Assembly (NCBI RefSeq): GCF_032062105.1 | Contig: NW_026937303.1 | Span: 620,001 to 684,000, forward strand | Origin: Saccostrea cucullata | Lineage: Eukaryota | Reading direction: 5' to 3' | Length of the DNA: 64,000 nt | In this document: piece by piece, positions 165-62,808 of the stretch | Layout: every line of letters starts with the position of its first letter | Position numbering within the stretch: position 1 is the first letter of the stretch | Made by a program: the position numbers and the translations under genes | The notes under the pieces: model-generated | Seen by the model: the letters and a program-made list of their open reading frames with translations, nothing else | Databases searched by the model: none | Told to the model about the DNA's origin: nothing

Positions 165-1409
165 ACTATCTTTGGAGACTATGACGTCACAGTAACTCTG
201 CTGGAGTACAACAGAGACGAGGACTGTACGTGTGACGTTTCGATTCTCGGGTCCGTATCTGTACGGGAGTGTGATGTATATTTCGGGATATGTCTGGAAA
301 CGACACCTCAGACACAAGGGTGACTCTCTCTTTCAATTTACTCATTTAAGAAATGTATTTGTTTACAATGTACATTAACACTCAGCATGTTAAAATGACC
401 TCAGTGTTATTATACAATTATGGACTTCAGTGTAGGTCGATATGTGGTTATAAGGACTCATGGCAATTGATATTGACCGAAGACACAGAAAGTGATAGCG
501 ACCGAGCCTGCGAGGAATATCATGTGACGTCCTTTCAGCCAATGAAATTAGAGAAAATAATCCTCTTATATAATATTCCAAATTAATGGGTGACAATGAT
601 TATCAAGACTTCATACCCAGGAATGTCGAATGTCTGTACATATAAAATTTTTAAAGAGAAAAGCTTAAATTTTTGGAACAGATAGTTTCATTTCTGTTAA
701 ATGATTTAATTTTCGGTGCTTGTTTTAGAAAAATATGCTATGGTAATGACACACTCCAGCGAGTTTTTTACACAAATAGCTTTTTATTTGTCCAACATCC
801 GAGAACGACTAATGTTTACACGTGGACGGAAATCAAAGGGCAGGTAAATGTTCAAATACAGATAGGAAAAATTACAAATGATTTCTTTTAAACAAATAAT
901 TGCTTTTTGTTTCTTATCTTGTCCGTAGCCCTCCTTTCAAATATTAGTTCACGCTTACGACTACGATCCAATCGGTGGCAATGATGGTCTTGGTGTGACA
1001 AACTACACACACAGAGGGAATACAACTACACGAGTGACCAACGTCACCACAACACCCGGAGATAAAAACTTATGGTGAAAGTCAAGAAGTTTAATCAATA
1101 ATTTTTTGACTGAACAAAATTTTATTCAGTTCTACAATGTCACTCATTTTTAGATTTCTCAGATTTTTACTGAAGGAAAATGTGGATTAATTGAACCTTT
1201 TTATGCTGATTATCACTCCATATTTCGTACTTTTCTTATCTAGGATAAGATTAACACTGGAGGTCTCGTGCTCAGTAAATTATTTTGGACAACAGTGTGA
1301 TCAGAGAGGCATAACAACGACATCAGAAACTCTACCACTAATACCTGTAACGACTACAACAAGAGCAACAAAAGAAAAGGTTTTAAATGAATCACTTCAC
1401 AGAAATTAA
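165..1409 (+). CDS. Cassette A1 (5'-partial; leader exon upstream of window): Notch-ligand-type C2/MNNL domain + DSL stub + short Thr-rich tail, predicted secreted
   Basis: GT-AG exons 165-319, 729-843, 929-1074 and 1244-1409 (phases 0/2/0/2) splice to an open 193-aa frame: TIFGDYDVTVTLLEYNRDEDCTCD..ECDVYFGICLE..KICYGND..NSFLF..YTWTEIKGQ|PSFQILVHAYDYDPIGGNDGLG..IRLTLEVSCSVNYFGQQCDQRGITTTSET..HRN*. Motif order matches the Delta/Jagged N-terminus (ELKL.EF..CC..C..FF.VCL..C.YG..DSF..TW..F.L.IEA..V.C..YYG..C). Confidence 0.8.
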
Positions 1410-2110
1410 TTTCACCAAAAACAGCCACTAAAACATTGACAGCATAAAATAAACAATGGAAAAAGTTCACCAACAAGAAAAGTTACACCAATAACAATTC
1501 TAAAACCAACAAACACTGCACAAAAACTATGCAAGTAAAAACAACTACTGTACACCATCACATCAACACGTACATTAAACAACAATACACGAACAACGAT
1601 TAAACCCACAACAAAGCACCATACTAACAGAGATTCAACAAACAGCAATACCCCAAAAAATTATCAACTATACCAACAACAACATTGATAAAAGAAATTA
1701 ATTACAACAACAAACCCCGAAAATGCGATCAATATCAACCTTAGCAAAAATAAAAATACCATCAATATTAGCCACCATGTCAGCAACAACCACGACACCA
1801 CCAACAATCACTTTATCAGGAACAACAACACCATACGAACAGAAACTCTATAAACAGCAATAATTATGAAAACAACTACACCAACTTAAACTAATACACA
1901 AACAACAACAACAGCAACGACTAACTTACAACGCTATAAACATCAAGCATACAACTCAACACATAAAACCATCAACATCAACCACCATGCCTAAAACAAC
2001 CACTTCACTACCACCAATCACTTCCTCAACAACGAGGGTTATATCAATAGAACAACTTCGATGAAAAACATTCATAACACCAGCCACCACGATTATACAA
2101 ACAAGAAATT
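1410..2110 (+). pseudogene. Decayed Thr-rich mucin-like coding sequence after the A1 stop
   Basis: Dense ACA/ACC/ACT/CCA codon runs (aca aca aca, cca aca atc act) with multiple stops and frameshifts; paralogous to 60403-60940. Confidence 0.65.
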
Positions 2111-2558
2111 GTTAAGTGAATGAAATATAGTAGATTTTTTTAAAAATACAATGCGATGTTGTTTTTTTTCATGAAGCACATTTTTGATTTACTCTCCCTC
2201 TATCTCAGACGTTTTGGAGGCCCATGTTTGCTCTGCTTCTATTTTGTATTGTTTCATGGACTTTTGTAATTGAATACTGTTCGTTATCTCCATATCCTTC
2301 ATGTAGGAGTAAATACATATATGATACATATTATGATTAGATATATATGATACATACTATAAATCCTAAATGACTGTACATAAAATACACTTGCCTGGTA
2401 GGTTACTGGTAACTGTGACGTGTCAGTGAAGCAGCTGAAGTACAACTGAGACAGAGACCGGGATTGTGAATGTGATCGGGCTTTTCTCAGACTCTGTGAC
2501 GATTGTGATGTTTATTTCCAGATTTGCTTACAACCTTTATCACCAAGACAAGAGTAAG

Positions 2559-2561
<3 letters not shown>

Positions 2562-2612
<51 letters not shown>
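2562..2612. repeat. (CT)n microsatellite at the start of cassette intron 2
   Basis: Directly visible; equivalents at 324, 33452, 47036, 59133 and 61418. Confidence 0.95.
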
Positions 2613-60288: not shown

Positions 60289-60402
60289 TGTGATCAGGGA
60301 GGCATAACAACGACATCAGAAACTCCACAACCAATACCTGTAACGACTACAACAAAAGCAACACAAGAAAAGGTTATACATGAATCACTTCACAGAAACT
60401 GA

Positions 60403-60940
60403 TTTCACCAACAACAGCTACTAAAACATTCACAGCATAAAATAAACAAAAGAAAAGTTCACCAGCAAGAAAAGTTACCCCAATTAATATTCTAAAACCA
60501 ACAAACACTGCACTAAAACTATAAGATTAAAAACAACTACACCATCACATCAACACAAACACTAAACAACACAAAAACAACGATTAAACCAACAACAAGC
60601 ACAAAACAGAGACTCTACAAACAGCAATACCCATAAAAACATCAACTATACCAACAACAACAACAATACAAACATTAACTACAACAAACGCCATAATGCT
60701 ATCAACATCATCCCCTAGCAACAAAATCAAATACACAATCAACATCAACCACCATGTCAGTAACAAACACTACACCTCCAACAATCACTTCCTCAACAAC
60801 GAGGGTTACAGAAACAAAAACAACTTCGATGAAAAACAATCATTACACCAGCGACCACGAATATAAGAACAAGAAAACATTTTAAAAATCAAACAACTAC
60901 ATAACTATACAATTACAACTACGTCAACAACAACAAAAAA
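60403..60940 (+). pseudogene. Decayed Thr-rich mucin-like sequence (paralog of 1410-2110)
   Basis: ACA-rich codon runs with stops and frameshifts. Confidence 0.65.
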
Positions 60941-61270
60941 TCAATTAAAATACTGCCGCTTGAAAAGTGGGAGGGGATAGAGTGATCGGGATATCCGTCC
61001 GTCCGTCTGTTACGCTTTAGAGTACCTATCTCTTATCTGCAACTCCTATTATACCACAGAATAATATTTGATAAGACTTTTACAGAACCTTTGTTACATG
61101 GTACAAAAATGCTCTCCAGTTTACTTTTTCGTCAGGCTCGTATTTCGGGTTTCCCATACCAAAACAAGGCCATTCTTTTATCAGTAAATATATGATACAT
61201 ATTATGATTCAATATATGAAACATACTATAAATTCTCAATGACTGTACATAAAATACACTTTCTTGATAG

Positions 61271-62808
61271 GTTATTAGTAGCTATGACGTGTCAGTGAAG
61301 CTGCTGGAGTACAAAAGAGACCCAGAAAGATGCTGTGATCGTGTTATCCTTTGTGATGAATGTGATGTCTATTTCCAGATCTGCTTACAACCTTTATCAC
61401 CAAGACAAGAGTAAGGATCTCTCTCTCTCTCTCTCTCTCTGGATTTAGTATATTGAATTATTGAAAATAAACTTTAATATTATCTTAAAGATAACATCCT
61501 ACCTATGTAATGCAAATCATTGCTTTTAACACCAATAATTGCTGGTGCATACACAGAAGTCTCAAGATAAATATTTCCTCTTAATGAAAATATTCATTAA
61601 TCAGGTATGAATTTAGTGGCAATGATTCGATCTTTATTTGTATTTTTACAGTCCTAAGTGTTATGGGGATGATGAAAACCTGCGAGTTAGTGACACAAAC
61701 AGCTTTTTATTCGAAGACTCTCTGAAATCCGCTGATTTCTACACGTGGAAGACCATCCGTGGACAGGTTATTACACATACATAAAAATTGTAGAAGATAT
61801 TTCAAAAGCCTTCAATTAAAATACTGCCGCTTGAAAAGTGGGAGGGGATAGAGTGATCGGGATATCCGTCCGTCCGTCTGTTACGCTTTAGAGTACCTAT
61901 TTCTTATCTGCAACTCCTATTATACCACAGAATAATATTTGATGAGACTTTTACAGAATCTTTGTTACATAATGTCATTATGCACCTCCAGTTTACTTTT
62001 TGATCAGGTCCGTATTTCGGGTATCCCAAAGAAAAACATGAACACAGACATTCTCTCTATAATGCTGAATGGAACCCTTCGATCATCCATCCGCAACTGC
62101 TTCTAATCCACTGAGTAAAGTTTAATGATACTTTCGCAGATTCTTTATAAAACAATGCCATTGTGTACCTCCTATTTTACATTTTTATCTAACACTTATT
62201 CCGAGTATCCCGGAACAAAACATGAACTTTGCATTTGTAATCATATAGGAGGGCGGGGTATTTTTTATTGAGCTCAGAGTTTACAGCACCTCTAATTTAA
62301 TGCTTACGTTAACTTCTACATAGCCCTCGTTTGATATATCTGTTCATGCCTTTGACTTTGATGACTTTGATGACAATGATGATCTTGGTGTAACAACATA
62401 CGAATACCGAGGTAACACAACGACTAAGAATCTGACTGTCACAACGGAACCCGGCAGAAGAAATCTACGGTAAGATGAAATGGAACGATTCCTTGTTATT
62501 GAAAAAAGCATGTTGATTTTACAATAATCACTTATTCTCAGTTATTTGTCTTAGAGAAAATAATGAAACCCCTATTTTCAATCAATCTATAAATAATTAA
62601 CACACGTATTATAAAAGATTGGATTGCACATATGATCTATTTAATAAATCAGGTTTCGATTCTTTATTTCTTAAGAATAAAGTTAGCACTAGATGTTACA
62701 AGTAGAAAAGACAACGCTCGAAGTGGACAAGAAAATGTCAACATTCCAAAACAGAAATGGCTACATTTAGTTGTCGCTGTGTCGGCTGCATCTTTGTTTT
62801 GTCTGTAG
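61271..62808 (+). CDS. Cassette B4: intact C2/MNNL + GPI-signal cassette with no leader exon of its own
   Basis: Exons 61271-61410 (VISSYDVSVKLLEYKRDPERCCDRVILCDECDVYFQICL..), 61652-61766, 62324-62469 (AFDFDDFDDNDDLG) and 62676-62808 (..RSGQENVNIPKQKWLHLVVAVSAASLFCL*) are open and phase-compatible with leader 56088-56138. Confidence 0.78.
61820..62297 (+). mobile_element. HINE/Pearl-like element at the same intron position as 2873-3409; its 5' ~200 bp is also copied at 60946-61150
   Basis: GCCGCTTGAAAAGTGGGAGG, (CCGT)n, GCAACTCCT core repeats, GGGCGGGGTATT 3' end. Confidence 0.6.

What the first reader, a model, noticed from the sequence alone, without database searches (positions are those of the whole stretch)
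165..62808. Tandem cluster of stand-alone Notch-ligand-type C2 (MNNL) proteins in GPI-anchored and secreted forms
Seen: six paralogous 4-exon cassettes with identical intron phases, plus four leader exons. Intact B cassettes have the six-Cys spacing CC-x4-7-C-x2-3-C-DVYF.ICL-x11-C-YG, then N.F.F, Y(T/S)W, F.I.VH and a final beta strand. Known (recalled): the Delta/Jagged N-terminal C2 module has this motif order (DLL1: CC..C.C..FFRVCL..CTYG..DSF..FTWP.GTFSLIIEA) and is normally fused to DSL, EGF repeats and a TM helix. Here there are no EGFs and no TM. B forms end in small residues (SSG), a polar spacer and a ~15-aa hydrophobic tail with no cytoplasmic part, which is a GPI-signal layout. A forms keep only the first DSL Cys pair (C..NYFG..C) and a Thr-rich tail. 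Inference: an expanded family that took the lipid-binding module of a Notch ligand and deploys it as surface and soluble proteins. Possible roles are Notch decoys/modulators or lipid/glycan recognition molecules (immunity, gamete recognition, biomineralisation). I do not know of a description of this architecture.
Basis: partly seen in the sequence, partly recalled or inferred. Interest (0 to 1): 0.92.

Follow-up and report, generated by a model that had tools for sequence, protein, structure and literature searches.

The report
Oyster Notch-ligand C2 surface protein family
Rock oysters have multiplied the membrane-binding tip domain of Notch ligands into a tandem gene family, and one branch appears to have turned its transmembrane helix into a GPI-anchor-type tail by a small frameshift, giving expressed surface proteins that probably bind lipids with calcium rather than signal through Notch.

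Summary
The six cassettes and four leaders are real. The genome is Saccostrea cucullata, and the cluster extends beyond the window to 14 copies over about 200 kb. The domain folds as a C2; a paralogue that keeps DSL best matches Jagged/Delta, so Notch-ligand origin is supported, though Pfam MNNL stays below cut-off. B2 and B3 are intact signal–C2–hydrophobic-tail genes, and the tail exon is spliced in two RNA runs. The tail is the first half of a paralogue's transmembrane exon, cut by a 5-nt insertion, and is under purifying selection (pN 0.06, pS 0.30); GPI attachment itself is inferred. Correction: A cassettes are not secreted Thr-tailed forms. RNA joins short A exon 4 to a B exon 1, giving one two-C2 gene; both window copies are broken in this assembly. 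Flanking paralogues do carry transmembrane helices, mucin stalks or DSL arrays. Five acidic residues match the calcium-binding pattern of perforin C2 and tardigrade AMNP. Best reading: calcium-dependent lipid-binding surface proteins; a Notch decoy role is unlikely. No paper found. The scan noted DSL-array genes elsewhere in this genome, not this tail.

The parts
165..1379 (+). Cassette A1, exons 165-319, 729-843, 929-1074, 1244-1379: C2 domain, first Cys pair of DSL, short Thr-rich linker ending at a phase-0 donor. Its leader lies 3.1 kb upstream of the window.
1380..2110 (+). Decayed Thr-rich (mucin-like) sequence, stops in all frames; read as intron after the 1379 donor
   Evidence: by homology to A2
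2402..4090 (+). Cassette B1, broken (stops in exons 1 and 2, insertion in exon 4, Ca-loop aspartates lost); second half of the A1-B1 unit
10216..10265 (+). Orphan A-type leader exon, one base short at the donor, followed by an LTR element
19341..19394 (+). Leader (signal peptide) exon L2, phase 0, nearest upstream leader for B2
33301..34297 (+). Cassette B2, exons 33301-33443, 33636-33750, 33830-33972, 34186-34297; with L2 an open 188-aa signal-C2-GPI-type protein
36551..36604 (+). Leader exon L3 of B3
   Evidence: RefSeq P0050
46880..48264 (+). Cassette B3, exons 46880-47025, 47253-47367, 47454-47605, 48153-48264; with L3 a 192-aa protein identical to RefSeq XP_062586217
56088..56138 (+). Leader exon L4 of the A2-B4 unit
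58974..60372 (+). Cassette A2, exons 58974-59128, 59726-59840, 59926-60068, 60237-60372; TAG at 60286-60288 in this assembly, C read at 60286 in both RNA runs; donor 60372 joins a B exon 1
61271..62808 (+). Cassette B4, exons 61271-61410, 61652-61766, 62324-62469, 62676-62808; second C2 and GPI-type tail; exon 2-3 and 3-4 joints seen in both RNA runs
34241..34338 (+). B2 example of the tail: homologous to a full transmembrane exon of the paralogue 78 kb upstream of the window; a 5-nt insertion shifts the frame and brings the stop; the old donor site survives in the 3' UTR

Best explanation
A tandem family of oyster extracellular proteins built on a Notch-ligand-derived C2 domain with interchangeable C-terminal parts. 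Shown: C2 fold; DSL follows the C2 in one paralogue; TM, mucin-stalk, DSL-array and soluble versions exist; B genes are spliced and under purifying selection; their tail derives from a TM exon by a 5-nt insertion. Inferred: the tail is a GPI signal, so B2/B3 are single C2 domains and the intact A+B gene is a two-C2 protein held on the outer membrane. Inferred: five acidic residues (C-D and E/D-C-D of the beta1-beta2 loop, D-x-D-x5-D of the beta5-beta6 loop) bind Ca2+, and the variable tip loops bind anionic or glyco-lipids on an opposing membrane, particle or microbe. The proteins would act as Notch-independent lipid-recognition or adhesion molecules; with no cytoplasmic part they would tether, opsonise or be shed, not signal by themselves.
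For: Fold: AlphaFold pLDDT 79, eight-strand sandwich; Foldseek C2 hits incl. Jagged1 E 6e-6; VIA Z 10-12 to C2 domains, Delta 10.6, perforin C2 10.7. C2-DSL paralogue: top 16 ranks are Jagged/Delta/Serrate, E 1e-8; phmmer to Jagged1 E 6e-6. Ca loop aligns to synaptotagmin/otoferlin; all five Asp in 12 of 14 aligned cassettes, lost in pseudogene B1 and one TM paralogue. Jagged1 uses the equivalent Asp72/Asp140 (PMC3888931); perforin D483/D485/D491 has the same spacing (PMC10400287). RNA joints. dN/dS 0.36 among B C2 exons, core 0.27; dN four times higher in loops. Tail pN 0.063 vs pS 0.298; tail versus TM exon score 76-90 against shuffle maximum 53-59. B form shared with S. echinata.
Against: No GPI predictor or biochemical test was run. 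The candidate omega residues lie at the end of the last beta strand with no flexible linker. The S. echinata tail is longer, has two Arg and is less hydrophobic (0.94 vs 1.5-2.1). Loop dN/dS is 0.5-0.6, so no positive selection is shown. Ca geometry was not inspected in the model. No tissue or infection data. Half of the window's cassettes are broken in this assembly.
Confidence: 0.55

Rival explanations
1. Notch modulators or decoys: the C2 still contacts Notch EGF12 through its beta2-beta3 loop and tunes signalling in cis or trans.
For: Notch-ligand origin; the strand-2/loop disulfide that supports the EGF12 site in real ligands (PMC5538765) has its two Cys conserved; a neighbour keeps DSL repeats and a TM.
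Against: Ligands bind Notch through C2 and DSL together (PMC5538765); B forms have no DSL and A only its first Cys pair. Identity to solved ligands is 12-20%. The genome keeps three strong canonical MNNL loci. Rapid turnover and loop variation do not fit a conserved receptor.
Confidence: 0.12
2. Metal-binding redox or mineral-handling proteins working like tardigrade AMNP: the CD...CD plus D-x-D site binds Mn/Zn/Ca next to a disulfide and acts as a peroxidase or Ca-carbonate nucleator.
For: AMNP is a signal-peptide C2-like family, 35 copies, with a CD-CD motif and D161/D163 as metal ligands (bioRxiv 10.1101/2020.11.06.370643); the oyster family has invariant C22-D23 and C32-D33 plus D97/D99; structural hits 7DBU, 7DF2 (Z 10.0), 7DBT (Z 9.4).
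Against: These hits rank no higher than other C2 domains; no sequence match. Display on long mucin or DSL stalks and variable loops suit recognition better than catalysis.
Confidence: 0.13
3. The hydrophobic tail is not a GPI signal: B proteins are secreted or loosely membrane-bound, the tail being a self-association or retention peptide left from the TM exon.
For: Tail is a truncated TM; no linker before the candidate omega site; S. echinata tail atypical; soluble family members are transcribed (Logan contigs P0017, P0033).
Against: Small residues, a 10-13-aa polar spacer and a 16-aa uncharged hydrophobic end are kept in all five S. cucullata copies with low pN.
Confidence: 0.15
4. Mostly neutral duplicates decaying after loss of stalk and TM.
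For: B1, A2, the 10216 leader and partial cassettes outside the window are broken; transposons fill the introns.
Against: dN/dS 0.24-0.45 for all B pairs incl. another species; spliced RNA; the second half of the old TM exon has decayed while the first half is conserved.
Confidence: 0.05

Closest known systems
Delta/Serrate/Jagged N-terminal C2 (MNNL, PF07657) with DSL
   Same: C2 fold; Cys-rich beta1-beta2 loop; strand-2 Cys and loop Cys; Asp equivalent to Jagged1 Asp72 and Asp140; DSL directly after the C2 in one paralogue; variable tip loops.
   Different: B forms lack DSL, EGF, TM and cytoplasmic part; full D-x-D-x5-D loop; scores below the Pfam cut-off; 12-20% identity; multi-copy with fast turnover.
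Bivalve-only DSL / tandem-DSL genes without EGF (PMC8166818)
   Same: The paralogue 11 kb downstream of the window is of this type: C2, 24 Pfam DSL stretches, no EGF array, TM.
   Different: In the passages I read, the paper does not describe the C2, DSL-less members or a GPI-type tail.
Perforin C2 and fish SmC2P1 (PDB 3W56/3W57)
   Same: Extracellular C2 with five-Asp Ca2+ site, same D-x-D-x5-D spacing; Z 10.7 and 11.1.
   Different: No MACPF pore domain; Notch-ligand Cys pattern; membrane anchor.
Tardigrade AMNP family
   Same: Signal-peptide, C2-like, tandemly expanded, CD-CD plus D-x-D metal site.
   Different: No detectable sequence similarity; soluble Golgi protein; no DSL link shown; peroxidase activity untested here.
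C. elegans secreted DSL proteins (from memory, not tested)
   Same: Notch-ligand derivatives without TM.
   Different: They keep the DSL domain and signal through Notch.

Membership tests
Notch-ligand C2 (MNNL, PF07657) | C2 beta-sandwich fold | tested here: met
Notch-ligand C2 (MNNL, PF07657) | Pfam gathering score 22.5 bits | tested here: not met
   20.9 bits for P0003 (E 2.6e-4), 16.8 for B3; 6 of 17 members match at E<=1
Notch-ligand C2 (MNNL, PF07657) | Strand-2 Cys paired with a beta2-beta3 loop Cys | tested here: met
   C39 invariant, C51 over 90%; pairing itself not inspected
Notch-ligand C2 (MNNL, PF07657) | Homology to solved ligands across C2 and DSL | tested here: met
   paralogue P0017: E 6e-6 to Jagged1, Foldseek E 1e-8; B3 vs P0017 32% identity, E 3e-25
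Canonical Delta/Jagged ligand | Complete DSL domain | tested here: not met
   absent in B, first Cys pair only in A
Canonical Delta/Jagged ligand | EGF array, TM and intracellular domain (PMC5356439 definition) | tested here: not met
   B exon 3 splices to the terminal tail exon; no EGF array found in the 244 kb examined
Canonical Delta/Jagged ligand | Binds and activates Notch | not testable with these tools
   needs binding assay
GPI-anchored protein | N-terminal signal peptide | tested here: met
   17-18-aa hydrophobic leaders, phase-compatible, in RefSeq models; SignalP not run
GPI-anchored protein | Small omega residues, polar spacer, C-terminal hydrophobic run without cytoplasmic tail | tested here: met
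   16-aa tail, mean hydropathy 1.5-2.1; by inspection only
GPI-anchored protein | Flexible linker before omega | tested here: inconclusive
   last strand runs to the SSG residues; an Asn 4-6 residues later is an alternative site
GPI-anchored protein | Covalent GPI, PI-PLC release | not testable with these tools
   experiment needed
Ca2+-binding C2 (perforin/synaptotagmin type) | Five acidic ligands in loops 1 and 3 | tested here: met
   sequence level, 12 of 14 cassettes
Ca2+-binding C2 (perforin/synaptotagmin type) | Ca2+-dependent lipid binding | not testable with these tools
   experiment needed
AMNP | Sequence homology to AMNP | tested here: not met
   no AMNP chain at E<=1 with the family profile

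The most novel reading that the evidence does not exclude
Oysters have a GPI-anchored, calcium-dependent lipid-pattern receptor repertoire made from the Notch-ligand C2 domain alone, with specificity set by variable tip loops, and its anchor arose in one traceable step from a transmembrane exon.
Probability: 0.3. Interest if true: 0.78.

Novelty: new variant of a known kind. Interest (0 to 1): 0.55.

Why it matters
In vertebrates and flies the ligand C2 only tunes Notch signalling and its natural lipid partner is unclear. Here the domain occurs alone, in pairs, on mucin stalks and on DSL arrays, which offers natural constructs to test what this C2 binds without Notch. The cluster also preserves a rarely visible intermediate: a transmembrane exon and its frameshifted, selected GPI-type descendant side by side. 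If the proteins recognise microbial or cell lipids they add a receptor class to bivalve immunity. So far the GPI-type form is seen only in Saccostrea and has no known function, which limits the score.

Tried and rejected
Secreted Thr-tailed A form: rejected for this window (stops in all frames; RNA uses the short-exon donor; no RNA contig runs through the Thr stretch, though contigs cannot prove absence). Ordinary Delta with distant EGF exons: rejected (B exon 3 splices to a terminal exon; canonical MNNL loci lie on other contigs). Positive selection on loops: not shown (dN/dS 0.5-0.6, gapped alignment). Tree: B copies are separated from the rest with 87/96 support but the root is unreliable (long outgroup), so no order of events is claimed from it. 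Homologue search beyond oysters found one freshwater-mussel protein only. ESM Atlas hits were all under 0.9, leads only. One search was circular and is not used. Paper searches for MNNL with oyster, GPI, or the C. gigas gene ids found nothing relevant. The folded protein P0003 is a RefSeq model that joins exon 1 of the upstream copy B0 to exons 2-4 of B2.
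Full report
Observation. Six cassettes of four exons are present on the + strand, with AG/GT boundaries and identical phases; exon 2 is 115 nt in all six. 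Four leader exons lie at 10216, 19341, 36551 and 56088. L2+B2 (188 aa) and L3+B3 (192 aa) are open, and the latter equals RefSeq XP_062586217. B4 is open. B1 has two stops and an insertion; A2 has TAG at 60286; the 10216 leader is one base short at its donor. Database proteins from a contig of the same length identify the genome as Saccostrea cucullata.

Extent. A profile of exon 1 finds 23 places in the genome, 14 on this contig across about 200 kb. I annotated 244 kb around the window. The flanking members differ in what follows the C2. One, 11 kb downstream, has a single exon with 24 Pfam DSL stretches (E 4e-65), a stalk, a TM helix and a cytoplasmic exon. Two more have the first DSL Cys pair, a long Thr-rich exon, a small juxtamembrane domain, a TM and a cytoplasmic tail. 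One upstream has a short stalk and a TM exon. Magallana relatives include two-C2 proteins with a Thr/Pro linker and an ShK-like end, TM forms, and soluble forms. Two soluble forms are on intron-free contigs of sequencing runs: signal-C2-DSL-ShK-like and signal-C2-Ser/Thr tail. One freshwater-mussel protein with C2, DSL and a Thr-rich region is the only non-oyster relative found. The stand-alone forms are therefore one branch of a modular family.

Fold and origin. The B protein folds as an eight-strand sandwich, pLDDT 79. It matches C2 domains generally, including Jagged1 (E 6e-6), Delta (Z 10.6), perforin C2 (Z 10.7) and SmC2P1 (Z 11.1); fold alone does not single out Notch ligands. The link comes from the paralogue that keeps DSL: its sequence matches Jagged1 across both domains (E 6e-6), its model's top hits are all Jagged, Delta or Serrate (E 1e-8), and it is 32% identical to B3. 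Pfam MNNL is the top family for B exon 1 but stays below the cut-off. The two Cys that in real ligands staple the beta2-beta3 loop (PMC5538765) are conserved.

Calcium site. The family has invariant C-D and C-D in the beta1-beta2 loop and D-x-D-x5-D in the beta5-beta6 loop. The latter aligns with the Ca loop of synaptotagmin and otoferlin and has the spacing of perforin D483/D485/D491 (PMC10400287). Two of these positions correspond to Jagged1 Asp72 and Asp140 (PMC3888931). All five are present in 12 of 14 aligned cassettes and are lost in pseudogene B1 and one TM paralogue. Tardigrade AMNP uses a CD-CD motif plus D-x-D for Mn/Zn binding (bioRxiv 10.1101/2020.11.06.370643) and is among the structural hits; this is a resemblance, not shown homology. 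Calcium binding is inferred from sequence.

RNA. Two runs, assembled contigs from other animals or close relatives, were laid on 56950-62940. They show GT..AG joints for A exons 2-3 and 3-4 and B exons 2-3, and the B exon 3-4 joint into the tail exon in both runs (depth 69 and 23); one contig runs 88 nt past the stop without a gap. Both runs read C at 60286, so transcripts have a sense codon where this assembly has the A2 stop. In one run a contig continues from the A exon 4 donor at 60372 in frame into a B-type exon 1 (decoded); in the other a contig joins A exon 4 to the B exon 1 acceptor. No contig covers the Thr-rich stretch. A and B are thus halves of one gene, leader-C2-linker-C2-tail, about 377 codons for the L4 unit. 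Limits: the joined B exon has a different tip loop from B4, so this shows the join for a paralogue or allele, not for this haplotype; leaders were outside the stretch laid; unspliced contigs also occur; tissue is unknown. In this assembly both two-C2 units in the window are interrupted by stops.

Origin of the tail. The B tail aligns at DNA level with the TM exon of the upstream paralogue. Local scores are 76-90 against a maximum of 53-59 in 2000 shuffles each. The alignment has one 5-nt insertion in mid-helix that shifts the frame and brings a stop; beyond the stop the old frame is still recognisable up to the old donor site, but now carries stops in most copies. The retained 26 codons show pN 0.063 against pS 0.298 across four S. 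cucullata copies and S. echinata (pooled pairs, not independent). The direction TM to short tail is inferred from the surviving donor in the 3' UTR. The tail occurs five times in the genome, all in this cluster. Its layout is that of a GPI signal: small residues, polar spacer, 16 uncharged residues of mean hydropathy 1.5-2.1. Against: no linker separates the last strand from the first candidate omega site, and the S. echinata tail is atypical. No predictor was available.

Selection. Among B C2 exons dN/dS is 0.24-0.45 per pair, 0.27 in the core; loops have four times the core dN but dN/dS under 1. A1 versus A2 is 0.81 and B1 versus B4 0.67, in line with relaxed constraint on the window's two-C2 units.

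Mechanism. Most likely (0.55) these are surface proteins whose C2 binds Ca2+ and, through variable tip loops, lipids on an opposing surface, independent of Notch. Loop variation sets lipid preference in human ligands (PMC5538765), which makes the inference reasonable but untested. Rivals: non-GPI soluble form with similar binding (0.15), AMNP-like metal enzyme or mineral protein (0.13), Notch modulator (0.12), neutral decay (0.05).

Comparison and novelty. They are homologues of the Notch-ligand C2 but not Delta/Jagged ligands by the usual definition (PMC5356439). Bivalve-only tandem-DSL genes without EGF have been noted (PMC8166818), which covers one neighbour. I found no paper on DSL-less or GPI-type members; the library searched is incomplete.

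Noticed in passing
window 25723-31202 (+): Intact-looking LINE in the L2-B2 intron: ORF2 (endonuclease, RT, zf-RVT) of 1275 codons; ORF1 carries a UPF0029 (IMPACT/YigZ-like) domain, Pfam E 5e-14.
   Followed up: partly
window 10335-18078 and 37064-43749 (-): Two LTR retroelements with 99.8% and 98% identical terminal repeats, so recent insertions; the first has a 1409-codon open frame, the second is split into several frames.
   Followed up: no
L034:857-5950 (G000:C19440:694857-699950): Paralogue with C2, a 1024-codon exon of DSL-like repeats, stalk, TM and a cytoplasmic tail with an NPxY motif; its Ca-loop aspartates are partly lost. A second copy lies on contig C1989 (L022).
   Followed up: partly
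G000:C19440:721480-721960 and 735230-735750: Small unannotated alpha/beta juxtamembrane domain between mucin stalk and TM in two paralogues and in Magallana proteins; no Pfam match; position suggests a SEA-like module, untested.
   Followed up: partly
G000 contigs C15695, C22507, C17020, C13668, C19764, C21301 and others: About 20 further places match only the first 50 positions of the MNNL profile, besides three strong canonical loci: a second MNNL-like expansion in this genome. DNA could not be fetched.
   Followed up: no
RefSeq LOC134247828 isoforms X1-X3 (P0009, P0003, P0025): RefSeq joins exons of the upstream copy B0 to exons of B2 across 40 kb; either cross-cassette splicing or mis-mapped paralogue reads.
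   Followed up: no
G000:C19440:736425-736860 and 737160-737590: The cytoplasmic exon of the last TM paralogue is duplicated in tandem.
   Followed up: no
window 19746-20983: Direct and inverted 352-bp repeat units with a 498-nt, 98% inverted pair, flanked by (TA)n.
   Followed up: no
L007-L014, L019: Other contigs carry family members at 75-99% identity to this cluster; some are probably haplotigs, others have distinct tip loops.
   Followed up: partly
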